A stretch of DNA of 64,000 nt, from the IMG/VR virus record IMGVR_UViG_3300032214_000715, positions 124,001 to 188,000 of that record. One strand, given 5' to 3'. The notes under the pieces were generated by a model that was not told where the DNA came from, did no database searches, and saw nothing but the letters and a program-made list of their open reading frames with translations. The position numbers and the translations under genes are program-made. This document shows positions 14,753 through 46,047 of the stretch, piece after piece. Each line of letters begins with the position of its first letter. Position 1 is the stretch's first letter.

Positions 14753-16483
14753 TCAATAGTTCTGTCCTGCTACGAATCCTGACCAACTTGTCCCGCCATC
14801 ATATGTCATTATGGTAATGATATCGTATTTGTTAGCAGTTGCGGTTATTACTGGGGCCACTCCACTTGGCCATTTGATAGACGATGGCCACGCTAGTGAT
14901 CTTTCGCCAATAGCATCTTGTCTAATAATTAGTGCCAAGTAGAAAAGTCTACCACTGACTGGTACATTACTGAAAGTTAGACTGGTAATGTTTGAACTCA
15001 TTGTAATGACAAAATTATTTGACAGTGAACAATCAATATTGGTTGTTGCTGACGCTGTTACATTACTAGTAGACTCAGTATAAGCAGTTCCAAATGCTAA
15101 TGACGATGACAGGGTTACAGCGCTTGAAAATATTGTAGCGTTCGGTACTGTGCCGCCGGCAAAACCACCGCCTGCTACAACATCATCAACATATTTTTTT
15201 GTTGCTGCGTCTGTTTCTTGTGTAGGTGTAGCAAGACTTGTAATACGCTTACTAGAAACATCAACTGTTCCGGTTCCAATTGGCACTAAATTAACATTAG
15301 CATTAGATCCACCAGCAGTAAATGTTAGAGCTTCTGTTCCAGTAATACTACCGGTAGTAGTTCCAGTTCCACCATTTGCTACTACAAGAGTGCCCTCTAG
15401 TGTTATAGTTCCACTACTAGTTATTGGACTGTCTTTTACTGTTAATCCTGTAGTACCACCACTTAGTGCTACACTAGTAACGGTTCCAGTGGCAGCCGAT
15501 ATAGTTGTCCAAGTTGGTGCTCCACCGTTTCCGTTGCTGGTTAATACTTGACCCGTTGTGCCATAATTAGCGCCACTTAGACCCCACGCACCAGAGCTAA
15601 CTATACGCAGTCTCTCTGTTTGTGAACTGCCAGTCGTTACGATTACTGAACCAACTCCATCTGGTCCAACACCGCTCTGTAAATATACATTGCCACCAGT
15701 TCCGCTACCACCTGCTGCCCCCGGTCCCCCTCGTAGATATACATGACCTGGAAGACCTCCAATAATTGGAACTCCGCACGCTCCACCAATAATTAGTATA
15801 CTAGCTCCAGTAGCGGAGCCAGTCGCGGCGGCCGCAGCAGCAATAGTAAAAGTACTATCGGATGCTCCGACGCTAATAGTATTACTGCCATTATAGCTAA
15901 TTTGTGAGGTGGCAGAATACGCATTAGAACTCTTAAATATTAATTGTCCGTTACTTCCAGGAACTGCGGTTAATCCAGTACCACCATTAGCTATAGCTAA
16001 TGTCCCACCCAGAGTCAATGTTCCGGATGATGTTATTGGTCCTCCAGTAAGAGTTAATCCAGTAGTGCCTCCGCTACTGCTAATACTTGTTACTGTTCCA
16101 ACTGCTCCCGGAGCCCACGTTAATCCACTAGTGGAAGCTGAATCTGCCATCAACACTTGTCCATCAATGCCAACAGCTAATCTTATGTTGCTGGTACCAT
16201 TGTTGGCAATAATGTCTCCTTTAGTTGTGGCGGGAGATAACTCATTGAACGCAGCGGTTTTATTATTTTGACTGGTTCCCCCTTGAGCTACTGATAGTGG
16301 AGTTGTTAATCCGCTCAAGCTAGTAATGTCGCTATTAGCTCCGCTTTTCGCCGCTTCTAAATTACTACGAGAAATGCCAATGTCACTGTTCCCAGTGCCA
16401 CCTTGAGCAGTGGAAAGTATTCCTGTTATTTGTGCTGCTTGTATAGATTGTATTTGTGTTGACTGTATTTTATTTTGTGGCAT
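14753..16483 (-). CDS. Fibre protein (GGTG shaft repeats; C-terminal domain ending GFVAGQNY)
   Basis: Gly/Ser/Thr-rich, xxGGTG repeats, DAATKKYVD; C-terminal domain paralogous to that of 43363..46047. Confidence 0.8.
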   Translation of the reverse strand: MPQNKIQSTQIQSIQAAQITGILSTAQGGTGNSDIGISRSNLEAAKSGANSDITSLSGLTTPLSVAQGGTSQNNKTAAFNELSPATTKGDIIANNGTSNIRLAVGIDGQVLMADSASTSGLTWAPGAVGTVTSISSSGGTTGLTLTGGPITSSGTLTLGGTLAIANGGTGLTAVPGSNGQLIFKSSNAYSATSQISYNGSNTISVGASDSTFTIAAAAAATGSATGASILIIGGACGVPIIGGLPGHVYLRGGPGAAGGSGTGGNVYLQSGVGPDGVGSVIVTTGSSQTERLRIVSSGAWGLSGANYGTTGQVLTSNGNGGAPTWTTISAATGTVTSVALSGGTTGLTVKDSPITSSGTITLEGTLVVANGGTGTTTGSITGTEALTFTAGGSNANVNLVPIGTGTVDVSSKRITSLATPTQETDAATKKYVDDVVAGGGFAGGTVPNATIFSSAVTLSSSLAFGTAYTESTSNVTASATTNIDCSLSNNFVITMSSNITSLTFSNVPVSGRLFYLALIIRQDAIGERSLAWPSSIKWPSGVAPVITATANKYDIITIMTYDGGTSWSGFVAGQNY

Positions 16484-16491
16484 GTTCTTCC

Positions 16492-19400
16492 TTATACAAA
16501 GCTATATATTGTAATTTCGTCACTCGCTTGTAGTTCTTGATTAAAGGTTATTTCTTTTGTTCCAGTAACCATATAGGACTTAGTAGCTCCCTCTCGTTGT
16601 AATACACCATTTATGAAAACTTGAATATACACAGTGTCGTCGGTTTTTGCTACTGTTTTTACCGTAGTTGTTATCACTATTTGTCCAGCAGTAGCAGTTA
16701 TTTCTTGATATTTAGGCCCTGCTGATTTCCACTGTGGTGCTGCTCCTGTACCACTTGAAGTTAATACTTGACCAGCAGTACCTGATTGACCCTGAATATC
16801 CCACTGTCCACTGGAGTGTATTTTTAATTGACTATCAAAACCAGGAATATTGTCGTTAGTAAACGTTACTTCCTCGTCTTTTTGATAGTTTACTGTTTGC
16901 AAGTCTATTGATTTGCTTTTTATTACTAGATCAGTAGCATTATTACTTTCTATTGAATTTTCAATATCATCAAAAACTTTTTGATAACGAATACTTGAAA
17001 TGATAGTAGCTTCTTTAGTGGGCTGAATTTGTACGGAATACTCGTTATTCATTAGAATTTCGTTACCGTTATCATCGGGCTCTAGTCTGGTGTGTATTAC
17101 TTCTAAAGACGCTCTTGGATTTGAGTTATTACCAATCCAACCCTGATTTCCGGCTATTCTAAGTCCACCGTGAGGAAGAAAGTTATATTGATTTAAAAAT
17201 CGCAGTTCTTCTACATTTAATCTTTCAAGTTTACCAACCTGTTGAAGAGAACTGTGAGTTATCGTGCTTGGCAATGTAGATCCTACAAGCCCTCCAAGAT
17301 TTACACTTGGGAATTTCCAAAGAGCCGGCGTGTCAGCGCCACCGCTAGTAAGAACCATTCCTTCGGTCCCATATTCGCCGTTTATTCCTATTTTTCCGGA
17401 ATTATCTATTTCAACTATTTCTATTAGAGGGCTTGCTGGATCCTTTGCTGTTCTAAATATAATATTTCCGCCAGATCCAAGAGCTGAAGTGCCACCGTCA
17501 ATATAAACATTCCCACCAGTAGATTCTTCTCCCGACGCAGAACCTGCTTTTAAGAATATATCTGCTCCAAATCTATTTGAAAGATTACTCGCGCCTGATT
17601 GTAGTACTAAACTTACTGGCCCCGGTACATTGACTGATGTTTGCGTGATGGAAGTTCCATCAACGTTTGATGCTCCAAAAATAGTAAAGAAGTTGTTGTC
17701 GTCTTCATCACTCCAGGCACTACCTAATCTTAGAGCAGACTGAGCTACGTAGTTAATATCAGTGATTCCATCTATTACCCCATCTTTATTAAATAATAGA
17801 TTTTTATTTACACCCCGTGATATAACGGTAGTTGGATATATCCATTCTGCTGTTGAGCCGTCACTGACTAGGGATTTACCAGCAGTGCTACTGTCTTGAG
17901 TTGGTAGAAGTTTCTTAATTCCCGCTTCTGCCGTCGTCGCTCCTGTGCCACCGTGTTCTATTTTTAGAGTTCCCCCAAGCGTAAACGTTCCTCTATCAGT
18001 TATTGGTCCACCGAGCGTTGTAAGTCCTGTTGTCCCTCCACTCATCTCAACTGAGTTTACTGTTCCAACTACTCCGCCGGTAATTACACTAATAACCCCG
18101 TTATCGTCAGTTCTAGTAGTTATTCCGTCTGGCTTTACAAGTCCCAATCTACCTTCAGTAGCAGTTGGAACTAAACTATCACCTGATAGACTGGCCCAAA
18201 AAGCATTTGTTCCGTTACTTGCTAAAACATAGTTTTCTGCTAGCTCTTGATCTGGTAATAGATTAGTTAAAGCATCTACTTTGTTGGTTGCCGCTGTACC
18301 ACCGTACTCTATAGATAGAGTACCCCAATATGGAGTTGTATCCCCTCCGGCAGATAATAGAGGCTGTCCTGGCAATCCTATTTTTGGATCGCCTCCACCC
18401 TCTGAGTCCTGACCCATTTCTCCCAACTGCCACGCGCCAGTATTCCAGATGGTAAAGACTCTCTTAGCGTCTTCATATTTAGCGGTTTTAAATATTATCT
18501 GTCCGCCCTCTTGTTTATATGGGTTATTATTAGGGTCAAGTTCAGAACTTATATATCCCTCCCCGGCCTCAATATAAATATCTGCGCCTGGGCTCGATGG
18601 AGAAAAACCACCAGGAGATGGGGCGCCTGCGACCCCATCTCCCGCTTTTATAAATATGCTTCCAATCCCGATATCTTCAGGCTCCCACGTAGGTCTTTCA
18701 CGCCCACTGGCGTGACCTCCAACAATTGATATTGTTCCGGTGTGGTATCCATATCCCGGTCGTGAGCCTGAGTTAGATGTGTATATTCTAAGATTAGTCC
18801 ATGACTCGCTCGTAATTCCGAACTCATGCGTTACAGAATCGGTATTTCTAAAACGATCACCGAGTACTAAAGCACTATTGGGCACATATATGCGCGGGTC
18901 CAGTGATGGTTCATAACCGTTGTGTATATATTTAACTGTTCTAGCGTACTGTGTTTTTCGTGCGCCCCCGTCGGCATATATAAAAGAATTATAATCCTCT
19001 TGCTCTAGAGTATCAAGACTCAATGCTCTGGCACTAATTTGATCAGTGGCCGGGTCAATATACATAGAGTTAGAGTTCAAAGCAACTATACCCGGCTGAA
19101 TATAGTTAGCTATCGGTACAGGAGCACTTTCCCAAAAAAGATCGTATCCATTCCACAGCTCAGGTGTCGTCTCTTCATATGGTACATATCGATACTGTAG
19201 ATAATATGAATTACCGTCATTCGGGTGAGGTGGGAGCAAATTCCTTATATCAGTGCTTAATGTGCCATCATGTGCTACTTGTATTGTTGTTCCATCTGGT
19301 TTTACTACCCCAAGTCTATTAGTAGTGGCTATTTCTAACCCAGATGCCTGCACTGGCGCCCAACCAAGTTGTATTTTGCCGGAGTTATAATTGTATGTTA

Positions 19401-22400
19401 GATATTCACCGTGGCCTGACGTGGTGTTGCCCACCGGAAAAATTCCACCAATATCTACTTTTATTATTCCTTCTGTTTCAGTAATAATGGTTTCGCCGTC
19501 TAATCTAACTCCACCCAATTTACCTTCGGATCCAACTCCCGCTCTTGGAATGAATGCTTCCATCTCTGCCCAAAAAAGACTACCACCAGTGGTGCTTAAG
19601 ACTTTACCTTGATTTCCTTCTTGATTTGGAAAAAATTCATTGTAAAATAAATCACCGAAAAATTCATTGTTAAAGCCTAATTGCCCGTGAATATCCAGTA
19701 GTAGATGCTCTTGATTTATTTTAATGACACCAGGTCGTGAGGCCGCTCCGTATGTAGCTAGTGGAAGTTCTTCCCATCTAAGTGTTCCGGATTTTGTACC
19801 TTCTTCGGTAGAAACGCCGAATCCGTCAGTAGTTAAAAAGTGAAAATTTTTTCCTGATTGATCGGGAATTATTTGATTTCCAACATTTATAGTGTTTACC
19901 TTAATCATTCCACGACCCTCAGGGTCACGAAGAGTGTCATGATCAATCTCTGCTACTTTTGCCCTTAATGAAATACCCAATCCTGCCGGATGCCCGACCA
20001 GTTGTAGACCTCCGTATTGAACATCTCCTACCGGTGGGTGAATCAAAACCATTCCGCGTTTGCTATAACTAGCTATCATAGAATCCCACTTTGGAGATTG
20101 ACTTGTTCCTCTAGATATTAGTATATGATTTTGTTCACCAGTGTCAGTTTCTATCTTGTTAAAAGCCCAAGACCCCGACGAGTTTATTCTAAAAACTTCT
20201 TCCGACGGTTCCCCAGTACTAAAACTTATAAAGCCAGAATCTGCTAGTCCAAATCCACGACCTCCAGTTAAGTACAGATTCCCTGCCGGGGGAATAGTTA
20301 AACCCTCAATAGCGAATGAATCGCCGCCTTTTATTTCTACTGATGATCCTCCGTTAGTAATAGATTTTGCTTCTTGTCCTACTATTAAAAATAATTCGGA
20401 TAAGCCACTTCCGACTGTTAATTCTCCTCGACCGTCATATGATATGCGACTGGTACCACCTAAAAATCCTTCGTTATTGTACTGAAGCTGTCCGTTTAAT
20501 CCAACGGCGCCGGGCTTTGCTGTATCCCATCGTATGTTAGTGCCGTTTGTAGTAAGAACGAAATCTTTTTTGCCAGCTTGAGGAGGTAGAAATGAGTTTA
20601 TGGCAGCAGATGGGTCCGATGTTCCAGTTCCACCCTGTTCTATGCTTAATGGAGTTGTTAAACCACTAAGACTTGTGATATCACTATTTGCTCCGCTCTT
20701 TGCCGCCACCAAATTTATTCTGGCACTATCTGCTGTTGTCCCACCGGTGCCCCCAGCAAGAACAGGCAACACATCAGCCATTAATGTAAGCGCACTAGTA
20801 CTAAACAGTGCTCTATTTGGACCAATCAGAGTTGATAATCCAGTGCCGCCTTGATTTACACTAAGCGGTGTCGTCAGTCCACTCAAGCTAGTGATGTCGC
20901 TGTTATCACCACTTTTTGCTACTTCTAAATTAGCGCGAGCGCCCTCTGGTGTTTTACTACCAGTACCACCCTGATTTACACTAAGCGGAGTTGTTAGACC
21001 ACTTAAGCTAGTGATGTCACTGTTATCTCCGCTTTTTGCTGCGCCTAAGTTTGCCCTTGCGCCTGTCGGCGTTTTACTACCAGTGCCGCCTTGATCAACG
21101 CTAAGCGGTGTCGTCAGTCCACTCAAGCTAGTGATGTCACTGTTATCTCCGCTTTTTGCTGCTCCTAAGTTTGTTCTTGCGACAGAGGGCGTAGAAGCGT
21201 TGGTTCCTCCCTGCGCGATAGTAAGAGGAGTAGTCAGTGCTGATAATCTTGTAATATCATTGTTTACTCCACTCTTAGCCACTTCTAATTCTATTCTAGC
21301 TAGTGCTGGAGTTGACGCATTAGTTCCGCCCTGCGCCACACTAAGTGGAGTTGTTAATCCACTTAAGCTAGTAATGTCACTGTTATCACCACTTTTTGCT
21401 GCTTTCAAGGACTCTCTGGCTTCAGCCGCGTTTGTTGATCCAGTGCCGCCATTATTAACAGATAATACTCCGCCAAGAGTTATGATCCCGATTCCACCAT
21501 TTGCTCCCGTTACTGGTCCGCCAGTGGTAGTTAACCCAGTTGTGCCACCGTTAACATTTACGCTTTTTACAGAGGTCGCTAGTGGCTCTACCCAAGATAA
21601 TATTCCCCCGCCATCGGTAGTAAGAACTTTATTTTCGTTGCCAGTTTGATCGGGCAACATAGCAGTAATAGTTGAACTTAGATTATCGTAACCAGTGCCG
21701 CCAAATTGCGGTGATAGCACTTGAGTCAATCCAGAACTTTTTCCAGAAATGTCACCCGTTATACTTGCTCCACTTATAGCTGCTATAGTTGATAGTGCGT
21801 TCCCGTCGGATACAACAAATCCAGAGTCAAAACTGGTTCTTCCAGTTCCGCCCTTTGATATCGGCACAGTATTTAAACTAAGAGTAATAGTTCCTGATCT
21901 TGTTATTGGGTTAGTGCCTCCTACAGTTAAATCAGTAGAGGTTATGGTGACTGAATTTACTGAACCATACTGTGGAATATTAAGAACGTTATTATCAAAC
22001 GTAGCAGCACCACTGGTGCCAACAGTCTGTAGCGTGACTACACCCTGATACACGGGAATATTTAATACATTGTTCGTGAATGTAGCTGATCCTGTTACAT
22101 CATTCGTGGTTAAACTTACAGGCAGTTGATAATCAATATTGGGTTCCGCAGTTTGTAGACCGCCATTAACTCCCTTAGTTATTCCATTGATGTATGTGCC
22201 AATTGTTATGCTAGGGTAAGTACTTGCGGAAGACACTTCTCCAGTAAATCCATTGGATGAGTTAACCGAAACTGATTTAACTGTGCCTACTATACCGTCG
22301 GTAGTAACACTTATTCGTCCGGTTTGATTGACTACTATAGTACTATTGTCAACAGTGACTGAACCCAGTACCGACATAGTTGCTACTCTAGAGCTTACTG

Positions 22401-23211: not shown

Positions 23212-23263
23212 TTGATATCCTTAATGTTTAGTAGTATTTATTCTTACTGTGTCAGTAAAGATA

Positions 23264-29200: not shown

Positions 29201-29488
29201 TCTTCCGTCGCTACCGCCTAGATATGAGCATATTATTTTTTCATTTACACTGGAAATTCCCGTGCTACTGGGTCTTATCCAGCATTCAATTGTATAACTT
29301 ACTCCGCTAAGATTTAAATTAGTATCAGCAGTGTTTACCCATAATTCGCCGCCGGCGTCAAATTTCACGCTATTAAAATTTTGCGGTATTACTAATTCTG
29401 TAGTGCCAACAGTGTTAATTACATCGCCGACGAAAAACTCAGTTTCGGATACGTAATTTCCACTGGATGCCATTAATATTCCACTCAT
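23264..29488 (-). CDS. Giant adhesin with 7 LamG/concanavalin-like domains and Gly-rich domains
   Basis: Repeated FxGxxxYL...DFTIExW...WxH.A..R...GYISNLR..KG.A.Y..NFTP units; polyglycine tracts. Confidence 0.85.
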   Translation of the reverse strand: MSGILMASSGNYVSETEFFVGDVINTVGTTELVIPQNFNSVKFDAGGELWVNTADTNLNLSGVSYTIECWIRPSSTGISSVNEKIICSYLGGSDGRTQYSLYLLNGLLTAKLHTGNGNYTTITSTVKLSADIWVHVALTYTAPTTRLYMGGQLIASSNTAISTTNSTKFVIGGNSTATGFFDGHISNLRVVKNGNVLPTASSFTPMGQSLTYAPYIIYPHTGERSENPITSILTCQGSAGEQTFIDNSGNNLTINKSSSGVTATVLSPFINTTTNNGSSYFFSSGYVDVVSGSVSNYTFNLEANDFTIELWMYTDASPSSGMILIDTRTGNSNGYVLNTNSNRTITLNRWGATILTSSERINLSCWNHIAAVRSGNEIRIYVNGVSSNNTTGITGTTTFTVPGSILRIGQKLWASSGVGNFVGYISDVRILKGTALYVSNFTPPTTRLQPINNTILLTLQTPWRPVDNSVTNAIVQAYNTVRSDVFSPTSSAAFYRNWSTYFNGNGDYLTIPTNAAFSFDTGDFTIECWVYLNTKTGYPVFAMLGDGVDATPTQRLCAWSLYFDGGANQLVFARYTPTYAGLTFSWNPSLNQWYHVCLTRGGTSLRAFVNGTQIGTTQSNNTNYTAVNSTSLHVGRFIANGGVSFFLNGYISNLRIVKGTAVYTSNFTPSSSPLTAITNTALLTCQNGYPVDVSSNKFSITINSNPLPVQFSPFNVETTSTVDVDYVIVGGGGGGGSGVAGGGGGGGGVITGSTTVTPGTKIINVGAGGLVGENGKASIIHLSPYYGASFVGSNSYLSVPTNSAFGFGTGDFTIEFWAKWDGKLPTSAVNGGTFIDLRAAVGAESTAIFLSTGGALQYYNGPANLVYGSTAFTTNVWNHVALTRQSGVWRIFLNGIEATGTHTSASDLGTTKPVLIGQGINGSTTSFSGLISSLRIIKGTALYTANFVPSGGRLSTINNTVLLTAQELTAIPQPVNYSILFNGSSYLSIPKGPAHEFGSTPFTVEGWINAPNVSTVQGILGNFQSVAGGGWRVVLSSGYISYYQTGGGQAYSNTTILPNTWNHFAVVGDGSTIRMFLNGILGEVTCNQLSTITSQGHLVIGLNPDTLVWLFNGYMSNIRIVKGTALYSANSANFIPPISALTTIENTTLLTCSGTSIIDSSTNNLALTVNGSATVDVNTPYGTETQRWSTYFDGAGDYMSTGSNTAFNFGTGDFTVEFWVNSADVSSATQRGILQTSTTNGGLMTSYGTGITVIQGLSRTLSNLTGSLIVNVAGTWVGPTIAVMTANTWNHVAIARVSGTATLYINGTSVDSRVAAEDITATNIAIGGYYSTSYLFRGYLSNLRVVKSTAVYTANFTPSTTPLSATVNTTLLTCQGALFVDNSTNNLSFTARADVRPILSSPFTSTAVTTQSRSVFFDGTGDYLSTSNSTAFNFGTGDFTVEGWVYLTTTENRGIFQLSGNSIGLNASASNTIGLYVDNVAGAPYSVYWAGTAANTGATAVINVWTHFALIRRSGRTTVYINGVPAASRIDTTNYSCTGVAIGGYYSTSYLLKGYISNFRVVKGRALYIDSIAPTSSLTAIANTTLLTANAEQIVDGSNNNLTITKVSNPTVVTVGPFGSATPDPFLDGSITNATITTVGPVSKVLTSPTFEAYGGGSGGNWLAYNSATSGLSGASGGGAVGYYMPTGIGYGATSPGAGFSTQGNSGGTATPWSACYVHRGAGGGGAGAVGGNTLSCSAGDGGLGRLVSFTNKYYGGGGGGGVSSDNGYSATVGLNGLGGIGGGGNGHRNTVPAVAATNGQANTGGGGGGGGGLGGSGTVIIRYKSKITDTVFDKPGTYYYVVPDGVYNVSVVCVGAGSGRGLAVKAGDSTFGTTEVIGYGANGTVGGSYVGTGGANGGNGGDTYTVLTVLRGGSGGGAAGYRGNGGVGLNPIITTPLGGLGVGIYGIGSTSGNAVADGGGGGGGGSSPFTQNGYGSWGGSFGTQYWTNSFGGLFGGGAGGYFASTPAAGGGGGGLGWKNNIVVTPGQIIPIVVGNGIKNYNAGGGGAWGAVRVISGSGRSFPDASGPSIQSSN

Positions 29489-38031: not shown

Positions 38032-41000
38032 CTATGTTGGAGTAAAGTTAGCTGTGTACTTTGCGTAGCTATTAATTTGTAAATTGTCTAAATATCCACT
38101 GTACAAGTATGCCGAGCTATAGTAACCACCTATTGCTATGTTGGTAGCAGTTATACTTCCACTAGCGACTCTACTATCAACTGATGTTCCATTGATGTAC
38201 AGCGTGGCAGTACCGGAAACACGAGCAATCGCTACGTGAGTCCAAGTATTGGTTGTTACTACTGCTGAATTGGACCCAACGTTCACTCCCGCTACAATTA
38301 CAATTAATCCCCCGGTTAGTGCCCCGAAAGCACGATTAGAACCTTGAAGTATTGTTACTCCAGTTGTGTATCCAGTAGACAGTCCACCAGCGGTTGTAGA
38401 AGTTTGTAGCTGCCCGCGCTGCGACGCTCCGCTTACATCAGCGCTGTAAATCCAGAACTCAACAGTAAAGTCACCAGTACCCCAAGCAAGATTTGGATTC
38501 ACTGCTGTTAAGTAGTCTCCAGTGCCATCAAAGTACATAGAAGAGTTACCATTCTTTTTCTGTACGGTACTTAATGCTGAGTCACCGATAGTTTCAAAAA
38601 TATTATCACCGATACCATCATATATACCAGCATTTCTAAAGTTCAGCGTTAATGCTGAGCTTGCCAGTGTAGTAGTTGGCGTGGTTGGAGGAGCGAAGCT
38701 GTTACTGTACAATCCAGCGCCGCGAAGAATGCGAAGATTTGAGATATATCCATTAAGTGGATTAACTCCTCCGGGTCCTGCTCCGACAAGCATCGGATAC
38801 AGCACACTTCTGTACATTCCAGCAGTGCTACTTGCGATAGTGGTGGTAAGAACTCCGTTAGAGAACAATCTCAAACTACCAGCTCTTCTGGATATAGCAA
38901 TATGATACCAAACGTTTGGTTTTACGTTGGAAGCTATGATAGCGGCATTGGCAATATCCCACGCAGCATTGGCAGAAGATGCGTAAAGTACTAATCTGCT
39001 GTTAGTATTATCAAAATATACAACAAAAGCACCATATGTTATAGTTCCCCATCCAGAAGAAAGAACTGCCATGACAGAAGCAATAGAGGTTGGTCTCCAC
39101 CAGAAATCAATAGTAAAGTCTTCGTTTGCTACTGGTATAAAAGCATCGTTAGCCGGAACACTCAAGAAGTCACCAGTTCCATCAAAATAAGCAGTTCCAC
39201 CCAACAATGCTCCAGCAGTTGTTGTATTGGTAACACTTACTGTATTACTGAATGGAGTAAATGGATCAACTCTAGTGTCGCCGAATCTAGTAATATTCAG
39301 AGAATTACCACTAATATCATCCATAGTATTACTTTGGGCTACTAATAATCCAGTATTAGGTGTAGTTATTAATGGAGCGGTGCTGGGAGTAAAAGCGCTG
39401 TTATATAGTGACACACCCTTTAGTATTCTAGCATTTGATATCCATCCTTTGTACAACACAGTTGATGTAGCGGGAACTGCTCCCGCGCTTGTGAAATATG
39501 TGCCAAATGTAGTGTTTATTGACAAATAAGCCTTGGTAGTTGAAGAGGTTGCTGTAGCCACAGATACACCGTTTAACCACATTGTTAGCGCACTACCATT
39601 TCTAGTTACAGCAACATGATTCCAAGTGCCCATGTTCACGGCACTTGATGATGTTAATGTCGCAGTAAGACCGGGCGTTGCTCCTGCATGGAAAAATGTT
39701 ACTGTATTGTTAGATTCTAATCTTAGAATCCAACCTTCGCTGCCACTGGCCTGATTCCATTGAGCCATTAATGGTCTTATGCCAGAGGCAACTTCACTGT
39801 TAAACCAGCATTCTACAGTAAAGTTTCCACTCAATATATTAATAGCACTACTATGATTAACTGCTACATAGTCTCCGGTGCCATCAAAGTACCAAGAATA
39901 TAACCCATCAAATGGATCAAAGGAGTTGTTTATTGCTGGAGAACCAGATGTAGTTATAGCATATGCGTTACTACTATTGTCAATAAATCTGTTTGATTGA
40001 CATGTCAACAATGTTGTTCCTGAGATGGCAGTCAATGGTGATGTTGGCGGTGTAAAACTTGATCTATATACAGCGGTTCCTGTTACTATTCGTAAATTTG
40101 AAATATAACCATTAAAGTAACTTTGAAATCCGGTATACTGGGAAGAACCTATATTTGTTGTTCTTGCTGTTACGGTCTTAGTTATTGAAGTGACTGCTCC
40201 AGGAATACCATTGGTGTATATTATTACATTACCCGAATTACGAACCACCGCAACGTGAGTCCATGAATTTAGATTAACTGTACTTAACGTATTTGCGAAT
40301 GCCTGACTTGCGGTGTCACGTATTTGTACTTCTATTGTTCTATCAGTTTGTAAAGACACTGCCCAGTAATTATTGTCAGTATTGCCGGTGGCAGTAGATG
40401 CTATCATTTGAGTCGCCGCTACTGTTGTAGGATAAATCCAGCATTCAATAGTAAAATCACCAGTTCCAAATGTTGAGGCACCTGAAGGAGCAACCAAGTA
40501 AGCATTACTACTTAAAAACACACTATAATTACTAGCGTATGGACTTAATGGTAGTCCATTGTTGTTAGTGTGTATTGACGCATTGCTATTAGTCACAACT
40601 AAATTATTGCTACTGCTATCATTGAAATTATTTTCTCCTAAAATTAATAAACCAGTGTTAGAAATGTTAGTTAAATCAGTAGTTGGTGGTGTAAAATTGC
40701 TTGTGTATACAGCAGTACCTTTTACCACACGCACATTTAAAATATGCCCAATGAAAGGATAAAGTGAACCAGAATCTCTACCAACTCTGAAAATACTTGA
40801 TGGGTAATTTGCAGATGATGTTAATGTACTTCCAACTTGAGTTCCATTTACGAAAAATCTAATACTAGTTCCTGAACGAGTGACCGCCAAATGGTACCAT
40901 TGATTGATGGTAATAGTGTTTGAATTTATAAAATTGCCAGCAGTGCCCGTATACCAAAATTGAAAATTAGTTCCATATTGATACAATCTAAACGGTTGTT

Positions 41001-43308
41001 CAGCAGCATAATTATCTATACCAAATATCATTCTGTAAGATACAGTAGCACTTGTTGGATATGCCCAGCACTCGTATGTAAAATCACCTGTTAATGGGGC
41101 TAGAGAATCAGATGCTGGTACAGATAAAAACGAATTAGTGCCATTAAAACTCATGCTACCAGTCGTTAAGAACGGGCCAAACATGGTTGTCTTGGCATCT
41201 GCGGATACAGTTATTGAAGCATTATTAATACTATTGTCAATAAATCTAGAACTCTGACATGTCAATAAAGATGTTCCTGATATTGCGGTTAACGCGGATG
41301 TTGGAGGTGTGAAATTACTGGTGTACACTGCTGTACCTTTTACCACGCGAAGATTAGAAATATAACCATTAGTATAGGCACTAGTTGAGAAGTTTTGCCC
41401 GCCAATATACACGGTTGCTGATGGATTTAAAGCTACAGTAAGTACGGCACTGTAACCTTGAACACCATTTACAAATATTTTCAGCGTACCAGAGATTCTA
41501 ACAACTGCAATATGATTCCACTGATTATTCGTAATTGCAATTGACGATGCGTAAATTGTTCCATCGTAAAAATAAGGAAAGTTGCTCGCGTCAACATAAA
41601 ATGCATAAGGGGATGCTGAAGCAGCCCCTCTTGCATCTATTATAGGATTATTTCCGGCTGCTGGTTTATTTATCCAGCATTCAATAGTGAAATCTCCAGT
41701 ACCAAACTGAAATGCAGCATTTGTCGGCGTTGTTAAATAATCCCCATTACCGTCAAAGTATCCGCTCCAACTTTGTGTTACTGGTGTGATAGTTGTGGTT
41801 GTAGAAGTTAAACTGAAGGGACTATTTGCGGTGACTCTAGCATCACCAACTGTAGTTATTGTAAATGCGTTTGTACTGCTATCTGTCATCGCTGCGCCCT
41901 GACAGGTCAACAAACTAGTGTTTGAAATAGCAGTTAATTCAGATGTTGATGGCGTAAATGCTGAAGTATAAACGGCAGTTCCTTTTACTAAACGGAGATT
42001 ACTGATATATCCAGTATATGTCGCACCCCCATCATCAGCACCTATTCTAACCGCCGCTTGAGCAAAACTATAACTATTAGTTGCGGTGGCTACTTGTACT
42101 CCATTATAAAATAATCTCAGTGAATTTCCACTTCTTACTGCTGCTATATGAGTCCAAACATTTAACGTAGGCAACACATTGTATGCGATTTGATTATCAA
42201 CTCCATAAGCACGAATAACAAAGTCCGAATTTACTTTACCAACAAATAATCCTCCAGTGGCAGTGGTGGCATATACCGCGTGTACATTGTTACTCCAACT
42301 TGTTGGATATATCCAAGCCTCCCATGTGAAGTCGCCGGTTCCCATAGAAAATGCCGCATTACTTGACAAAGATAGATAATCTCCGTTGCCGTCAAAGAAC
42401 ACACTACGTGCTGGTAATTTAGTTATTTCAGTTGTTGTCGGAACGTCAAATGGTCCATAATGTCTAGATTGAGCGTCACCGTTAATTGTTAGCGCGAAAC
42501 TATTAGGACTGTTATCTACGAGATATGTATTCTGACAAGTCAATAATGACGTTCCTGATATTGCGGTTAGTACGGATGTAGATGGAGTGAAGTTACTGGT
42601 GTATAATGCGGTACCTTTTACCATTCTTAGATTAGAAAGATACGCATTTAATTTAGAATATGTGGCCGTTTGATTGGCTCCAGACGAAAAGTTACCAATA
42701 CATGTTTGAATATTAGCACCTGCCCAGGGAGCATTTGCTGAAGAGGCTACCGCATTTCCGTTTAAGTATAAAGTAACAGTAGTAGTTGCTGAATTATAAA
42801 CTACTGCCAAATGAGACCACGTGTTTAACTGTAAAAGCGCAGAGCTTGTAAGTACTATCGCATTTGCTCTGTTTGAAGTAGTAAAGTAAACAAAATTTGG
42901 AGCCCCAGTTGAAGAAATTCTAAGCGCAAAGTTCTGGGAATTACTTCCACCATCGTCTTGAACTAAAATATAGTTATAACTGTTGACATCAAATGATACT
43001 GGATTTATCCAAGTTTCTATGGTAAAACTTCCACCAAATACATTTAATACTGTATTGGCAGGGATTGTTAAATAATCACCAGTACCGTCAAAAAACCAAC
43101 TACAATTAGTTGAATAGGGATTCAATGTTCCTTGTGTGACGTTTCCATTAGCAGTTATAGGGCCAAAGTAGTTGTTAGACTCATCAAGAAATACGTTGTT
43201 TTTTTCTCGGTTATATCCTTCGCCGGATAATTTCATTATGAGATACTTTGACAATGTACTAATTGCCGCTGATACCTTTGACGCTGACATGCTAAAAAAT
43301 CCGAACAT
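38032..43308 (-). CDS. Adhesin with 8 tandem LamG/concanavalin-like domains
   Basis: Eight units of FDGxGDYL...FTxExW...GYISNLR type; late promoter at 43330-43336. Confidence 0.85.
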   Translation of the reverse strand: MFGFFSMSASKVSAAISTLSKYLIMKLSGEGYNREKNNVFLDESNNYFGPITANGNVTQGTLNPYSTNCSWFFDGTGDYLTIPANTVLNVFGGSFTIETWINPVSFDVNSYNYILVQDDGGSNSQNFALRISSTGAPNFVYFTTSNRANAIVLTSSALLQLNTWSHLAVVYNSATTTVTLYLNGNAVASSANAPWAGANIQTCIGNFSSGANQTATYSKLNAYLSNLRMVKGTALYTSNFTPSTSVLTAISGTSLLTCQNTYLVDNSPNSFALTINGDAQSRHYGPFDVPTTTEITKLPARSVFFDGNGDYLSLSSNAAFSMGTGDFTWEAWIYPTSWSNNVHAVYATTATGGLFVGKVNSDFVIRAYGVDNQIAYNVLPTLNVWTHIAAVRSGNSLRLFYNGVQVATATNSYSFAQAAVRIGADDGGATYTGYISNLRLVKGTAVYTSAFTPSTSELTAISNTSLLTCQGAAMTDSSTNAFTITTVGDARVTANSPFSLTSTTTTITPVTQSWSGYFDGNGDYLTTPTNAAFQFGTGDFTIECWINKPAAGNNPIIDARGAASASPYAFYVDASNFPYFYDGTIYASSIAITNNQWNHIAVVRISGTLKIFVNGVQGYSAVLTVALNPSATVYIGGQNFSTSAYTNGYISNLRVVKGTAVYTSNFTPPTSALTAISGTSLLTCQSSRFIDNSINNASITVSADAKTTMFGPFLTTGSMSFNGTNSFLSVPASDSLAPLTGDFTYECWAYPTSATVSYRMIFGIDNYAAEQPFRLYQYGTNFQFWYTGTAGNFINSNTITINQWYHLAVTRSGTSIRFFVNGTQVGSTLTSSANYPSSIFRVGRDSGSLYPFIGHILNVRVVKGTAVYTSNFTPPTTDLTNISNTGLLILGENNFNDSSSNNLVVTNSNASIHTNNNGLPLSPYASNYSVFLSSNAYLVAPSGASTFGTGDFTIECWIYPTTVAATQMIASTATGNTDNNYWAVSLQTDRTIEVQIRDTASQAFANTLSTVNLNSWTHVAVVRNSGNVIIYTNGIPGAVTSITKTVTARTTNIGSSQYTGFQSYFNGYISNLRIVTGTAVYRSSFTPPTSPLTAISGTTLLTCQSNRFIDNSSNAYAITTSGSPAINNSFDPFDGLYSWYFDGTGDYVAVNHSSAINILSGNFTVECWFNSEVASGIRPLMAQWNQASGSEGWILRLESNNTVTFFHAGATPGLTATLTSSSAVNMGTWNHVAVTRNGSALTMWLNGVSVATATSSTTKAYLSINTTFGTYFTSAGAVPATSTVLYKGWISNARILKGVSLYNSAFTPSTAPLITTPNTGLLVAQSNTMDDISGNSLNITRFGDTRVDPFTPFSNTVSVTNTTTAGALLGGTAYFDGTGDFLSVPANDAFIPVANEDFTIDFWWRPTSIASVMAVLSSGWGTITYGAFVVYFDNTNSRLVLYASSANAAWDIANAAIIASNVKPNVWYHIAISRRAGSLRLFSNGVLTTTIASSTAGMYRSVLYPMLVGAGPGGVNPLNGYISNLRILRGAGLYSNSFAPPTTPTTTLASSALTLNFRNAGIYDGIGDNIFETIGDSALSTVQKKNGNSSMYFDGTGDYLTAVNPNLAWGTGDFTVEFWIYSADVSGASQRGQLQTSTTAGGLSTGYTTGVTILQGSNRAFGALTGGLIVIVAGVNVGSNSAVVTTNTWTHVAIARVSGTATLYINGTSVDSRVASGSITATNIAIGGYYSSAYLYSGYLDNLQINSYAKYTANFTPT

Positions 43309-43362
43309 AATAATTCCTATCCTTTGTAATATTTATCAGGGCTTATTCAGCCCCGATATGTA

Positions 43363-46047
43363 TTAATAATTTTGCCCAGCGACAAATCCGTACCAGGTAG
43401 TTCCGCCATCGTGAGTTACTAAGTTAAGAATATCAGTTTTACTGCCTGTAGTTGTTAATGTAGGAGCAGTTCCACTAGGCCATTTAACTGCTGCTGGCCA
43501 AGTAATTGTTCTACTACCAGTAGCATCCTGATTTAAGAATAATGTCATGTTATACGCACGACCAGCTACTGGTACATTACTGAATGCTAGAGTAGTAATA
43601 CTAGCATTCATAGTAACGTTAAATATGTTGCCTGCTGAGCAATCTATTGTTGTACTTGACGCTGATGTTACATTGGTACGAGTTTCAGTGTAGTTAGTTC
43701 CGAATGTCGTTGAACCACTAACTGTTAGACTACTTAATGTACCTACGCTTGTTAGTGAACTACTGACAACATTACTTGCTAGAGTTGTTCCAGTTAGTGT
43801 TCCGGCGTCACTAGAACCACCGCCAGAGACTGCTGCCCAAGTAGGAACTCCACCAACAACTGTTAGCACTTGATTGGTAGTACCAATAGCTAATTTGCTT
43901 AGTGTATTTGAGTCACTAGCATATAGTAAGTCACCAGTAGTCCAAGTAGATTGTGCGGTACCACCGTTAGTAGCAGCAAGAGTTCCGGATAGAGTAATTG
44001 TACCGCTACTTGTTATTGGGCCATCACTAGTAGTTAAACCAGTTGTTCCGCCACTGACAGCGACGGATGTAACTCTGGACATTGTTTGCCAGGTAGGAGC
44101 AGCATTTCCGTTACTTGTCAATACTTGTCCGCTAGTACCAACGTCAGAACCAGTTGATCCTACGCTCCAAGCTCCACTGGAGGTAATTCTTAATCTTTCT
44201 ACTAGTGAGGTAGAGTTAGAATATGTCTGTATAGCAACATATCCAGGGAAACTGCCGGCGCTGCCGCCGTTTAGAATAACATTACCGCCTGTTGTAACAC
44301 CGCCGCCACTTGATGTGCCACCCTGTAACGTTACATCTCCGGCAGTTGAGTTTGTTAGACTTTGTGTTCCGCCCACAATAACAATATTTCCGGGGAAAGG
44401 AGTAGGAGTGGATACAGATGAATTTCCAGTAATTGTGGTGGTAGCTGCCGCATAGGTAGCTCCAACGGCTCCAATACTTATACTAGTTACTCCGCTTAGT
44501 AAGCTGTTTATTGCGACACTAGCGGTTGTACCTCCAGTACCACCAGCAGCGATGGGTAGAGTTCCAGCAGTAATAGCACTAGCACTGGTTGAATATAATG
44601 CTCTGTTAGCTGCTCCAAAAGTAGATAATCCTGTGCCACCAACTGATGTTGGAACGGCACTGATGATATCAGTTCCAGCGACTTCGCCCTGCATGTTAAA
44701 AGTCGTTACTGAAGCTCCGATTCCAGAGTTAGTTCCAGGAATATAGTAATTTCCGCCACGAACATATACCGCTCCAGCAGATCCATTTACTGCCTTTCCA
44801 GTTCCAGCGACTACATTATAGGTAACGGCAGTAGCTATTACTGTGGCGCCGGCGGCGATATTAATACCGTTTCCATTGGCTTTAGTGGTAGTGACGGCAC
44901 TGTAACCTAAGCTAACGGTTCCGGTGGCAACATTTATTACATTGGTGGCACTAGTGGTTGCTATTTGAACTAAACTTAGTGTAATAGTACCAGATAGATT
45001 CACTGCGTTAGTTGTGCTACCTGAGCTTAGTGTCATATAACTAATAATACAGTTAGTTGTATTAGTGACATTTAACGTCACTGCTGTTCCAACTGTTGTA
45101 ATATCTGTGTTATACAAACGAATTCTGTTTCCACCGCTAGCGGTGCTAGTAGTTGTAAATCCAGCGCCGGAATCGCTGTACAGATAGCAATTATTCACAT
45201 CTAAACTACATTGTACTGTTCCAGCTAGAGTTAGTGCAGATGAAGCTCCTCCTGTAATAAACAGATTATTTAAACTGATATTAGTCTGAAAAATGCCCTG
45301 ATATGACTGTGTAGGTTCAACCGTTACAGAGCCATTTAAGAATGTACTTTTTAATTTGCCCTCAGCGCCAAACAAATGCGTGGTTGCTCGGTTTATAGTA
45401 ATGTTTTCTGCGTAGTTTCCTGGACCTATGAATATAGCTATGTGCGTGGCACTGCTGACAGTTACTGGGTATTGAGTATTTGCGTAACTTAGTGCTGCCC
45501 CGATGGTCAAGAATGGTTTCGAAATAGAGCCATCAGCGTTGCTATCATTACCGCCCTTAGTTACATACAAGCGATTAGCGATGTCTACTGTACTCCAGCT
45601 AGCACTGGTTCCATTGGTAACTAACACTTTACCATTATTATTAGCTTGACTTGGTAAAGAATCTAGAGTAGCCCAACTAGTATCTGTGCCGTCAGTAGTT
45701 AAAAATTTTCCAGTATTTCCGGTTTGACTTGGAGCAAGTGCGTTGAACGCAGAGTTTGCGGTGGTCTGTCCGGTTCCGCCGTTTGTAACCGCTAGTGTGC
45801 CAGCAAGTGTAATTGTACCGCTATCAGTGACTGGCCCACCCGTCGCTGATAATCCCGTTGTACCTCCACTAATATCTACACTAGTTACAGTGCCAGAATT
45901 TTGTCCTCCTATTACTATTCCACCGGCAGTGCTGCCGTCTCCAACATATAGTCGTTGAGTGTCTGTAGTAAATATTAATTCTCCCGCTGCTGGAGTTATA
46001 TTTGTTCTATTTGCTGCTAAGCCTCTTCTTAATTGTAATGATGGCAT
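43363..46047 (-). CDS. Fibre/spike protein: Mtd_N-like N-terminus, beta-helix-like middle, C-terminus ending GFVAGQNY
   Basis: LQLRRG...PAAGEL...LYVGDG; YVTKGGNDSNADGSISKPFLTIGAA...IFIGPGNYAE resembles a beta-helix cap. Confidence 0.8.
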   Translation of the reverse strand: MPSLQLRRGLAANRTNITPAAGELIFTTDTQRLYVGDGSTAGGIVIGGQNSGTVTSVDISGGTTGLSATGGPVTDSGTITLAGTLAVTNGGTGQTTANSAFNALAPSQTGNTGKFLTTDGTDTSWATLDSLPSQANNNGKVLVTNGTSASWSTVDIANRLYVTKGGNDSNADGSISKPFLTIGAALSYANTQYPVTVSSATHIAIFIGPGNYAENITINRATTHLFGAEGKLKSTFLNGSVTVEPTQSYQGIFQTNISLNNLFITGGASSALTLAGTVQCSLDVNNCYLYSDSGAGFTTTSTASGGNRIRLYNTDITTVGTAVTLNVTNTTNCIISYMTLSSGSTTNAVNLSGTITLSLVQIATTSATNVINVATGTVSLGYSAVTTTKANGNGINIAAGATVIATAVTYNVVAGTGKAVNGSAGAVYVRGGNYYIPGTNSGIGASVTTFNMQGEVAGTDIISAVPTSVGGTGLSTFGAANRALYSTSASAITAGTLPIAAGGTGGTTASVAINSLLSGVTSISIGAVGATYAAATTTITGNSSVSTPTPFPGNIVIVGGTQSLTNSTAGDVTLQGGTSSGGGVTTGGNVILNGGSAGSFPGYVAIQTYSNSTSLVERLRITSSGAWSVGSTGSDVGTSGQVLTSNGNAAPTWQTMSRVTSVAVSGGTTGLTTSDGPITSSGTITLSGTLAATNGGTAQSTWTTGDLLYASDSNTLSKLAIGTTNQVLTVVGGVPTWAAVSGGGSSDAGTLTGTTLASNVVSSSLTSVGTLSSLTVSGSTTFGTNYTETRTNVTSASSTTIDCSAGNIFNVTMNASITTLAFSNVPVAGRAYNMTLFLNQDATGSRTITWPAAVKWPSGTAPTLTTTGSKTDILNLVTHDGGTTWYGFVAGQNY

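What the first reader, a model, noticed from the sequence alone, without database searches (positions are those of the whole stretch)
14753..46047. Possible additional connector types linking fibre C-terminal domains to adhesin N-terminal peptides
Seen in sequence: fibres lacking the DGG plug end in compact globular domains, and the following genes start with short leaders that are not part of a repeat. 43363 (...WYGFVAGQNY) is followed by the 8xLamG gene (MFGFFSMSAS...). 32039 (...GTAFLWFNSATEAILTGSIT) is followed two genes later by the 7xLamG gene (MSGILMASSG...). 16492 (...VFINGVLQ...ITF...DEITIYSFV) is followed by 14753 (MPQNKIQSTQI...). Gene 14753 ends in a second GFVAGQNY domain but has no adhesin gene after it, so it may share the adhesin in trans. 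Established analogue: the T2-type gp38 adhesin attaches to the gp37 tip through its N-terminal domain. The pairings here are inference.
Basis: inference. Interest (0 to 1): 0.6.

Follow-up and report, generated by a model that had tools for sequence, protein, structure and literature searches.

The report
Plug-and-socket joints between phage fibre proteins
In this large phage's tail-fibre gene cluster, three kinds of small end-domain on the fibres are each matched, here and in hundreds of other phages, to a particular short starting peptide on another protein of the cluster. This looks like a set of plug-and-socket joints that clip interchangeable binding modules onto fibre tips, although physical binding has not been shown.

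Summary

- **Socket-1** (GFVAGQNY, on P0001 and P0007): the domain is always C-terminal in 83 other loci. A same-strand gene almost always follows directly. 42 of 74 distinct start peptides carry an M-S-x-I-K-K-L-M-x-A-A-G-G-type peptide, spread over at least 14 unrelated protein bodies.
- **Socket-2** (end of P0003): the next gene starts MSGIQMALLG in 63 of 79 loci. Conversely, 69 of 70 sites encoding that peptide have socket-2 just upstream. P0005 starts MSGILMASSG and is the best match among the genome's 405 ORFs. In a relative, the P0003 homologue is followed directly by an MTGILMASG LamG gene, so low-GC P0004 looks like an insertion.
- **Socket-3** (end of P0006): the next gene starts M-[AS]-Q-[KQ]-K-I-x-x-x-Q-[IL]. 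P0007 (MPQNKIQSTQIQ) is the genome's top match.

Synonymous codon variation shows that selection acts on the peptide, not the DNA. Sockets 1 and 2 fold as T4 gp9 / CBA120 XD1-like beta-sandwiches.

The one complex prediction gave no answer, so docking is inferred rather than shown. The closest known systems are the Klebsiella-phage branching domain with its conserved docking peptide, and T2-type gp38 on gp37. I rate this a new variant of a known kind. Whether P0007's socket takes a partner in trans is unresolved.

The parts
43363..46047 (-). P0001, an 894-aa fibre with an Mtd_N-type N-terminus and a C-terminal socket-1 domain
   Evidence: Translation; Pfam Mtd_N at 5-40; PHROG tail-fibre families on residues 784-894
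43366..43734 (-). Socket-1 domain of P0001 (residues 772-894, ...WPxxVKWP...DGGTTWYGFVAGQNY)
   Evidence: Beta-sandwich model, pLDDT 91.8. Nearest PDB neighbours: Pa223 spike Z 8.0, CpaA 7.0, CBA120 TSP4 XD1 6.2. Always C-terminal in 83 loci.
43243..43308 (-). Leader of P0002 (MFGFFSMSASKVSAAISTLSKY), the putative plug for socket-1. It precedes the first linker and LamG unit.
   Evidence: The gene starts 54 nt after P0001. The leader is conserved in relative G001 (MFGFWSVSARKISSGIS), again directly after a socket-1 fibre. It ranks 3rd of 405 genome ORFs with the gapped plug-1 HMM, E 0.41.
38032..43308 (-). P0002, 1758 aa, 8 LamG (Laminin_G_3) units: the putative distal adhesin array on P0001
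   Evidence: Pfam E 8.6e-145 with 8 stretches; domain map
32039..37966 (-). P0003, a 1975-aa fibre with a C-terminal socket-2 domain
   Evidence: Translation; PHROG tail-fibre hits
32042..32341 (-). Socket-2 domain of P0003 (residues 1876-1975, ...AGDAFSFYNDS...TQG...TLR..GT..TGN...ATEAILTGSIT)
   Evidence: Model pLDDT 89.7. Same PDB neighbours as socket-1: Z 9.4, 9.3, 8.8, 8.0, 6.8; Foldseek also finds T4 gp9 and gp10. At least 480 relatives in viral contigs; C-terminal in all 79 analysed.
29498..31978 (-). P0004, 826 aa, 3 LamG units plus a Gly-rich-type end and no plug motif. Probably an inserted gene that separates the partners P0003 and P0005.
   Evidence: GC 0.313 against 0.39-0.44 for neighbours. 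Absent from the same position in G001. Not among the top scorers of any plug model.
29459..29488 (-). Plug-2 of P0005 (MSGILMASSG)
   Evidence: Top scorer of 405 genome ORFs with the plug-2 model, 14.0 against 8.0 for the next. Consensus MSGIQMALLG in 63 of 79 loci. G001 has MTGILMASG directly after its P0003 homologue.
23264..29488 (-). P0005, 2074 aa, 7 LamG units plus a C-terminal Gly_rich_2 domain: the putative distal adhesin on P0003
   Evidence: Pfam; domain map
16492..23211 (-). P0006, a 2239-aa fibre with a C-terminal socket-3 domain
   Evidence: Translation; PHROG tail-fibre families
16495..16734 (-). Socket-3 domain of P0006 (residues 2160-2239, ...YIQVFINGVLQREG..K.Y.VTG...ITFN..L...DEITIYSFV)
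   Evidence: 216 relatives, mostly at the extreme C-terminus, some in tandem arrays; alignment A5; weak DUF4183 hit
16421..16483 (-). Plug-3 of P0007 (MPQNKIQSTQIQSIQAAQITG)
   Evidence: The gene starts 8 nt after P0006. Top of 405 genome ORFs with the plug-3 model, 22.4 against 11.5. Related starts follow socket-3 in other loci: MPQTPIINEQIQ, MSQKKIQDSQIE, MAQKKITGxQ[IL]D.
14753..16483 (-). P0007, a 576-aa distal fibre segment with plug-3 at its start and a socket-1 domain at its end
   Evidence: Translation. Homologues of 214, 685 and 795 aa with the same two ends follow socket-3 genes.
14756..15124 (-). Second socket-1 domain (P0007 residues 454-576), with no partner gene next to it
   Evidence: 54% identical to P0001's socket. 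Downstream genes are small and non-structural. In L200 and L188 the equivalent socket is followed by Gly-rich genes; the one in L200 has a plug-like start.

Best explanation
The cluster encodes three plug-and-socket connectors that assemble multi-protein fibres end to end. Each long fibre ends in a small globular 'socket' domain of about 75-125 residues. The protein that sits distal to it starts with a cognate 'plug' peptide of 10-20 residues, followed by whatever binding module the phage carries.

Proposed assemblies in this window:
- P0001 (socket-1) carries P0002 (8 LamG).
- P0003 (socket-2) carries P0005 (7 LamG plus a glycine-rich domain), across the inserted gene P0004.
- P0006 (socket-3) carries P0007, which itself ends in a second socket-1.

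Because plug and socket stay matched while the body behind the plug is swapped, the design lets phages exchange distal receptor-binding modules without rebuilding the fibre.

Shown here:
- the domains and peptides exist;
- socket type and plug type are reciprocally and specifically associated across hundreds of phage contigs;
- selection acts on the peptide at protein level;
- sockets 1 and 2 have a beta-sandwich fold.

Inferred: the plug physically binds the socket, possibly by adding a strand to the sandwich or by seating on the trimeric end face, and the distal proteins are virion-borne adhesins.
For: **Socket-1.** It is C-terminal in 83 of 83 loci, with 0-8 residues after it, and a same-strand gene follows closely in nearly all. 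In leave-out scoring, 42 of 74 distinct downstream start peptides exceed the 99th percentile of 765 background ORF starts. The motif heads at least 14 BLAST-unrelated bodies, including DUF7483, lactonase and WD40 propellers, Gly_rich_2 and LamG.

**Socket-2.** 63 of 79 downstream genes start with the strict MSGIQMALLG-type motif, mostly with an ATGA overlap, across at least 9 unrelated bodies. In the reverse test, 69 of 70 sites encoding that peptide have socket-2 just upstream.

**Socket-3.** Downstream starts are M[AS]Q[KQ]KI...Q[IL].

**Specificity.** Socket type predicts plug class in 65/71, 49/55 and 12/12 cases.

**This genome.** P0005 is the best of 405 ORFs for plug-2 and P0007 the best for plug-3. 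P0002 and P0005 rank 3rd and 5th with the gapped plug-1 HMM.

**Relative G001.** A socket-1 fibre is followed by a 10-LamG gene starting MFGFWSVSARKIS. A socket-2 fibre is followed directly by a LamG gene starting MTGILMASG.

**Three-part chain.** L200 encodes socket-3, then a protein with plug-3 and socket-1, then a Gly-rich gene.

**Codons.** In codons 2-10 of the plug-2 region, conservation at positions 1, 2 and 3 is 0.90, 0.99 and 0.65.

**Fold.** Both sockets give confident beta-sandwich models with the same phage-protein neighbours: Pa223 spike, KP1 baseplate protein, Solidus tailspike, CBA120 TSP4 XD1 and T4 gp9/gp10.

**Precedent.** In KP32, K11 and KP34, a 29-residue N-terminal conserved peptide on RBP2 and a branching domain on RBP1 are both required for RBP2 to be incorporated (PMC13352976).
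Against: - No direct evidence of binding. The one complex prediction (P0001 socket with P0002 residues 1-40, 1:1) gave no verdict.
- The fold match is to XD1/gp9-type sandwiches. XD1's role in CBA120 is unclear, and the same fold binds glycans in CpaA and StcE (PMC8825819). The sockets could therefore be receptor binders themselves.
- P0002's leader fits the plug-1 consensus poorly: it is not in the top 6 with the ungapped model, and E is 0.41 with the HMM.
- About a tenth to a fifth of socket-1 loci, and P0007 itself, have no plug-bearing gene next to them.
- Socket-3 also occurs as internal tandem repeats in some proteins, so it is not solely a terminal joint.
- Many loci come from related phages, so the counts are not independent events.
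Confidence: 0.7

Rival explanations
1. The C-terminal domains are the receptor-binding tips themselves. The downstream proteins are independent virion or accessory proteins whose conserved first residues serve another purpose, such as attachment elsewhere on the baseplate, or folding.
For: The XD1-like fold binds glycans in CpaA and StcE. P0007 and some other socket-1 proteins have no partner gene beside them. In rV5-like coliphages a 157-aa protein made of an N-terminal anchor plus this domain is annotated as a tail fibre.
Against: This does not explain why each socket family is tied to its own peptide class on the next gene. It also does not explain why 69 of 70 MSGIQMALLG sites sit directly behind socket-2, or why bodies vary while the first 10-15 residues stay fixed.
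Confidence: 0.13
2. The downstream proteins are fibre-assembly chaperones, like Tfa or gp38 of T4. They bind the fibre end only during folding and are not part of the virion.
For: Most socket-2 partners are small, 107-212 aa. Tail-fibre chaperone genes typically follow the fibre gene, as with Pam3 gp24/gp25 (PMC9608196).
Against: Tfa-type chaperones have a variable N-terminal and a conserved C-terminal domain, which is the opposite polarity to what is seen here. The partners carry typical binding modules (LamG, Gly_rich_2, propellers, PKD-like) and reach 1758 and 2074 aa in the window. P0007-type partners are plainly fibre segments.
Confidence: 0.1
3. The conserved junction is a nucleic-acid feature, such as translational coupling, a recoding site or a recombination hot spot, rather than a protein-protein joint.
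For: Most socket-2 junctions have an ATGA stop/start overlap. Conserved junctions would favour module shuffling.
Against: Third codon positions vary freely while the amino acids stay fixed (0.65 against 0.90 and 0.99). P0005 keeps the plug although it lies 2.5 kb from P0003. Gaps range from -4 to +54 nt in the window and other loci.
Confidence: 0.05

Closest known systems
Branching domain plus conserved N-terminal docking peptide of dual receptor-binding proteins in Klebsiella podophages KP32, K11 and KP34 (Latka et al. 2019, PMC6872550; 2026, PMC13352976)
   Same: A short conserved peptide at the very start of the second protein docks it on a small domain of the first. The body behind the peptide is freely exchangeable, and the partner gene lies directly downstream.
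   Different: In that system the docking domain is a T4 gp10-like module near the N-terminus of RBP1, which produces a branch. Here the sockets are at the extreme C-terminus of long fibres, which produces serial extension. They belong to other sequence families, and sockets 1 and 2 resemble XD1/gp9 rather than the XD2/XD3 jellyrolls. Three orthogonal pairs sit in one genome, and binding here is untested.
T2/S16-type gp38 adhesin on the gp37 long-tail-fibre tip
   Same: A separate distal adhesin is encoded after the fibre gene and is attached through its N-terminal part. Partner proteins here often end in glycine-rich domains.
   Different: I found no sequence similarity to gp37 or gp38: PDB sequence searches were blank. 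The attachment element here is a 10-20-residue peptide rather than a folded domain. The partners are LamG arrays up to 2074 aa long.
CBA120 TSP2/TSP4, G7C gp66 and T4 gp9/gp10 XD domains
   Same: Small trimer-forming beta domains in phage attachment organelles. Sockets 1 and 2 match TSP4 residues 79-180 (XD1) at Z 6.2-6.8 and match T4 gp9 in Foldseek.
   Different: The docking surfaces known in those proteins are XD2 and XD3. XD1's function is described as unclear. Sequence identity is only 9-17%.
T4 gp34-gp35-gp36-gp37 serial long tail fibre
   Same: Consecutive genes encode fibre segments joined end to end, like P0006 and P0007.
   Different: No homology was detected. The T4 joints are not known to use a portable peptide-and-domain pair shared across unrelated phages (from my own knowledge, not tested here).

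Membership tests
Klebsiella-phage branching-domain / conserved-peptide docking system | The secondary protein begins with a short peptide conserved among phages, while the rest of the protein varies | tested here: met
   Plug-1 occurs over at least 14 body clusters and plug-2 over at least 9. Plug-3 precedes fibres, Gly-rich proteins and others.
Klebsiella-phage branching-domain / conserved-peptide docking system | The docking domain is homologous to T4 gp10 (XD2/XD3 jellyroll) and lies after the N-terminal anchor of RBP1 | tested here: not met
   The sockets are at the extreme C-terminus. The fold neighbours are XD1/gp9-type, with TSP4 residues 79-180 matched. There is no Pfam hit.
Klebsiella-phage branching-domain / conserved-peptide docking system | The peptide and the domain bind each other, and both are needed for incorporation into the virion | tested here: inconclusive
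   Complex prediction gave no verdict. Bench tests were not possible.
T2/S16-type gp38 adhesin | Sequence or structural homology to gp38 (an N-terminal attachment domain plus a polyglycine sandwich) and to the gp37 tip | tested here: not met
   No PDB sequence match for the socket profile or for the P0005 C-terminal region. Only Pfam Gly_rich_2 was found.
Tfa-type tail-fibre assembly chaperones (Mu, P2, Pam3 gp25) | A conserved C-terminal helical trimerisation domain and a variable N-terminal fibre-binding domain | tested here: not met
   The polarity is reversed: the N-terminal peptide is conserved and the remainder varies. Family description from PMC9608196.
XD1 / T4 gp9-like beta-sandwich fold | Fold-level similarity to TSP4 XD1, T4 gp9, the CpaA repeats and the StcE domain | tested here: met
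   Socket-2: Z 9.4, 9.3, 8.8, 8.0 and 6.8, with a gap to 3.6 for the next hit; Foldseek finds gp9 at 8.5e-3. Socket-1: Z 8.0-5.3, with a gap to 3.7. These Z values are moderate, so homology is not proven.
Laminin_G_3 (ConA-like lectin) repeat proteins | Pfam PF13385 above the gathering score, in several copies | tested here: met
   P0002 has 8 stretches (477.6 bits), P0005 has 7 (386.4 bits) and P0004 has 3 (135.6 bits).
Pfam PF26209 Phage_phiTE_241_C (precomputed label on P0007-like proteins) | A match to the family model | not testable with these tools
   The label appears on the 685-aa and 214-aa P0007-like proteins, but the model is not in the local Pfam copy.

The most novel reading that the evidence does not exclude
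Aquatic and soil phages share a toolkit of at least three mutually orthogonal plug-and-socket connectors: socket-1 (GFVAGQNY type), socket-2 with the near-invariant MSGIQMALLG plug, and socket-3 with the MAQKKI..Q plug. These work like donor-strand or end-face docking joints. They allow fibres of two, three or more proteins to be assembled combinatorially. In this phage, one adhesin species may serve two different fibres, docking on both the P0001 and the P0007 socket-1 domains. That would be a general, portable rule for reading fibre architecture, and for predicting module swaps, from sequence alone.
Probability: 0.35. Interest if true: 0.75.

Novelty: new variant of a known kind. Interest (0 to 1): 0.62.

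Why it matters
Receptor-binding organelles decide phage host range, but for uncultured phages their architecture cannot be read from gene lists. A simple sequence rule would help: which end domain pairs with which start peptide. It would assign distal adhesins to their fibres even when genes are separated, as with P0003 and P0005. It would also explain how binding modules are swapped, and it would supply orthogonal connectors for engineering phage or tailocin fibres, as is already done with the Klebsiella-phage docking peptide. The socket and plug families found here are numerous (at least 480 and 591 viral contigs for sockets 2 and 1). They have no model in the Pfam or NCBIfam copies searched here, and I found no paper containing the plug-2 peptide.

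Tried and rejected
- **Complex prediction** (P0001 socket with alignment A2, plus P0002 residues 1-40, 1:1): no verdict, score 0.01 against a mark of 0.32, with the partner's fold uncertain. This is evidence neither for nor against binding. A trimeric set-up could not be tried because the cap is one job.
- **Megablast of the region against cultured phages:** no match.
- **tblastn of the P0006 end against phages:** no match.
- **Single-sequence search for related loci for sockets 2 and 3:** found only the same phage or one relative. Alignments were needed.
- **The search for homologous proteins on the P0006 end, limited to long proteins:** found only the query itself.
- **Pfam and NCBIfam on the three sockets:** nothing meaningful apart from a sub-threshold DUF4183 hit.
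- **PDB sequence searches:** blank.
- **PF26209:** could not be tested.
- **'LamG always follows socket-1':** rejected. Only 3 of 77 downstream proteins hit my LamG HMM. What is conserved is the plug, not the body.
- **P0004 as P0003's partner:** rejected. It has no plug, its GC is aberrant, and it is absent in the relative.
- **Plugs as signal peptides or lipoboxes:** considered unlikely. The hydrophobic run is about 5 residues and there is no Cys (read from the sequence, not tested with a tool).

Full report
**Setting**

The window is bases 124001-188000 of a 239,163-bp IMG/VR virus record. The record is linear, about 68% complete and 40% GC. The region 14.7-64 kb is one minus-strand block of fibre-like genes.

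I named the seven genes of the finding P0001 to P0007, in order of transcription:

| Protein | Coordinates | Length |
|---|---|---|
| P0001 | 43363-46047 | 894 aa |
| P0002 | 38032-43308 | 1758 aa |
| P0003 | 32039-37966 | 1975 aa |
| P0004 | 29498-31978 | 826 aa |
| P0005 | 23264-29488 | 2074 aa |
| P0006 | 16492-23211 | 2239 aa |
| P0007 | 14753-16483 | 576 aa |

Every quoted end and start is present. P0002 has 8 Laminin_G_3 units, P0005 has 7 plus a Gly_rich_2 domain, and P0004 has 3. The leaders lie ahead of the first LamG unit. P0001 and P0007 end in domains that are 54% identical over 123 residues, and these are the only two copies in the record. After P0007 come only small genes, a MoxR-like ATPase and a VWA protein.

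**Socket-1 (GFVAGQNY domain)**

PHROG profiles label it 'tail fiber protein'. The Pfam and NCBIfam copies have no model for it.

tblastn found it at the end of fibre proteins in cultured phages:
- Roseobacter phages CRP-4, CRP-9, CRP-13 and CRP-603
- Microcystis phage Mel-JY34
- Curtobacterium phages
- Limnohabitans phage DC31
- rV5-like coliphages

In each locus I inspected, a gene follows immediately.

A profile scan of IMG/VR found at least 591 relatives, and I took the best 80. In all 83 loci analysed the domain is C-terminal, with 0-8 residues after it. A same-strand gene starts within a few bases in nearly all.

The bodies of those downstream proteins are unrelated to one another: DUF7483, lactonase-type and WD40-type propellers, Gly_rich_2 and LamG. 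Yet many start alike, for example MSNIKKLMMASAGG, MATKKKLLQAAAG, MPINRKIMGVSRG and MLADRLRMAA.

With leave-out scoring, 42 of 74 distinct starts exceed the 99th percentile of 765 other ORF starts from the same loci. Motif-positive proteins fall in at least 14 BLAST-unrelated body clusters.

P0002's leader (MFGFFSMSASKVSAAIS) is an outlier of this class. It ranks 3rd of 405 genome ORFs with a gapped HMM, but E is only 0.41, and it is not near the top with the ungapped matrix. Its support comes from three things:
- Position: it starts 54 nt after P0001.
- The general rule that a partner gene follows socket-1.
- A relative, G001 (a 141-kb record). There an 834-aa socket-1 fibre is followed by a 10-LamG gene starting MFGFWSVSARKISSGIS.

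**Socket-2 (end of P0003)**

In cultured phages the same domain ends three proteins, each with a gene directly after it:

| Phage | Socket-2 protein | Next gene |
|---|---|---|
| Sphaerotilus phage SnaP-R1 | tail fibre gp42 | glycine-rich, starts MSAIQMAVLL |
| Synechococcus phage S-CBS2 | gp052 | glycine-rich 'PE_PGRS', with the same ...GAVRI.WG.GRSFP ending as P0005 |
| Synechococcus phage S-B28 | a 217-aa protein | LamG protein, starts MSLQKMSVG |

A profile scan found at least 480 viral contigs. In 79 loci analysed the domain is always terminal, and the next gene usually overlaps it as ATGA. In 63 of the 79 that gene starts with the strict MSGIQMALLG-type motif. Most of the rest have variants such as MGMMNMMMAPSG, MSAIQMLMGG or MMLQALLGG. 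The bodies fall in at least 9 unrelated clusters.

The reverse test gave the same answer. Scanning IMG/VR for DNA that encodes MSGIQMALLG gave 73 sites. Of the 70 with enough upstream sequence, 69 have a socket-2 just before them.

P0005 begins MSGILMASSG. It is the top scorer of all 405 ORFs of the genome with the plug-2 matrix, 14.0 against 8.0 for the runner-up. In G001, the P0003 homologue (3518 aa, socket 83% identical) is followed after 32 nt by a LamG gene starting MTGILMASG.

P0004 sits between the partners in the window. It has 31.3% GC against 39-44% for its neighbours, and it has no plug. I read it as an insertion.

**Socket-3 (end of P0006)**

An exhaustive HMMER search found 216 relatives of the last 90 residues. 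In most the domain is at the very C-terminus of proteins of 100-3800 aa. In a few it forms tandem arrays.

Context look-ups and a profile scan gave about 15 usable loci. The next gene starts with M[AS]Q[KQ]KI...Q[IL]. Examples are MAQKKITGVQLD, MSQKKIQDSQIE, MAQQKIKDSQIA and MPQTPIINEQIQ. A second variant is MPI[HQ][IV]SG. P0007 (MPQNKIQSTQIQ) is the top scorer of the genome, 22.4 against 11.5.

Three downstream proteins (214, 685 and 795 aa) are P0007-like: plug-3 at the start and socket-1 at the end. In L200, a Gly-rich gene with a plug-1-like start (MFALRAIAAASGS) follows that socket-1. So a three-protein chain is encoded in gene order.

**Specificity and level of selection**

I classified each downstream start by the best of the three leave-out matrices. 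This recovered the upstream socket type in 65/71, 49/55 and 12/12 cases.

In 46 distinct socket-2 junctions, codons 2-10 of the plug are conserved 0.90, 0.99 and 0.65 at codon positions 1, 2 and 3. The peptide is under selection, not the DNA.

**Fold**

Sockets 1 and 2 give confident models (pLDDT 91.8 and 89.7). Their nearest solved structures are the same set:
- the C-terminal domain of the Pa223 capsid spike
- a KP1 baseplate protein
- the Solidus gp83 tailspike
- the CpaA repeats
- CBA120 TSP4 residues 79-180
- StcE

Z scores are 8.0-5.3 for socket-1 and 9.4-6.1 for socket-2, and the next hits fall below 3.7. Foldseek adds T4 gp9 and gp10.

According to PMC8825819 this is the XD1 fold. It is present in T4 gp9, gp10 and TSP4. 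Its role there is unclear, and in CpaA and StcE it binds glycans. The fold is therefore at home in phage attachment organelles. It does not by itself tell docking from receptor binding.

**Mechanism proposed**

The sockets are docking platforms at the distal end of trimeric fibres, and the plugs anchor the next protein. This mirrors the experimentally established pair in Klebsiella podophages. There, a branching domain on RBP1 and a 29-residue conserved peptide on RBP2 are both required for RBP2 incorporation, and the peptide can carry foreign bodies (PMC13352976; PMC6872550).

The differences are these:
- The sockets here are C-terminal, so they extend the fibre serially instead of branching it.
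- They belong to other families.
- They come in three orthogonal kinds within one genome.

Tfa-type chaperones have the opposite polarity, with a variable N-terminus and a conserved C-terminus (PMC9608196). That argues against the chaperone rival, as do the sizes and lectin-like domains of the partners.

**What is not shown**

Physical binding is not shown: the only complex job gave no verdict. Many loci are related, so the counts overstate the number of independent events.

P0007's socket-1 has no adjacent partner. The same is true in L191 and in the contig of P0011. It may be a bare tip, which would fit the glycan-binding relatives of the fold. Or it may take a plug-1 protein such as P0002 in trans. 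I cannot decide between these.

No paper in the searchable library contains the plug-2 peptide, and I found no description of these pairs.

**Verdict**

It is a new variant of the known 'docking peptide plus docking domain' principle.

Noticed in passing
window 29498-31978 (-): P0004 (3 LamG units plus a Gly-rich-type end) has 31.3% GC against 39-44% for the flanking genes. It has no plug motif and is missing from the same position in relative G001. It looks like a recent insertion into the fibre cluster, and how it would attach to the virion is unknown.
   Followed up: partly
window 37900-37966 (-); L186 11290-11363 (-); L188 4001-4075: P0003, the 3518-aa fibre of G001 and a 1652-aa fibre in L188 all start M[SA][IL]IFSGNG..NGV.PIAQGGTG. 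Several upstream fibres in the window end ...LDGG[ATV][FY].
   Followed up: no
L200 4001-8117: A three-part chain is encoded in gene order: a protein ending in socket-3, then a 795-aa protein with plug-3 and socket-1, then a Gly-rich protein starting MFALRAIAAASGS and ending ...GAVRIIWGTGRSFP, then another gene starting MPIQVSG.
   Followed up: partly
window 27200-27400 (-), P0005 residues about 700-760: P0005 carries a short poly-glycine module (…VGGGGGGGSGVAGGGGGGGGV…) between its third and fourth LamG units, in addition to the C-terminal Gly_rich_2 domain.
   Followed up: no
window 11261-14717 (-): The genes after P0007 are 83-, 65- and 114-aa ORFs, a MoxR-like AAA ATPase (12641-13891) and a VWA-domain protein (11261-12547). 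The small ORFs and the ATPase recur in the same order after the P0007 homologue in L191 and in the contig of P0011.
   Followed up: partly
L008, L009, L091, L093, L173 (IMGVR_UViG_3300034198_009894): A second IMG/VR record of 153,585 bp matches the window at 100% identity in every stretch compared (both socket-1 domains, socket-2 and socket-3). It is probably the same phage assembled as a shorter contig.
   Followed up: no
L005 3815-7164 (Escherichia phage 92CQ): In rV5-like coliphages, socket-1 forms the end of a 157-aa 'tail fiber protein' in the baseplate module. A 958-aa 'tail protein' starting MSRIKHRI follows directly. This is a cultured, tractable case of the same adjacency.
   Followed up: partly
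contigs of P0011 and P0023: Precomputed annotation labels P0007-like proteins with Pfam PF26209 (Phage_phiTE_241_C), which may be a recent model of socket-1. It is not in the local Pfam copy, so I could not check it.
   Followed up: partly
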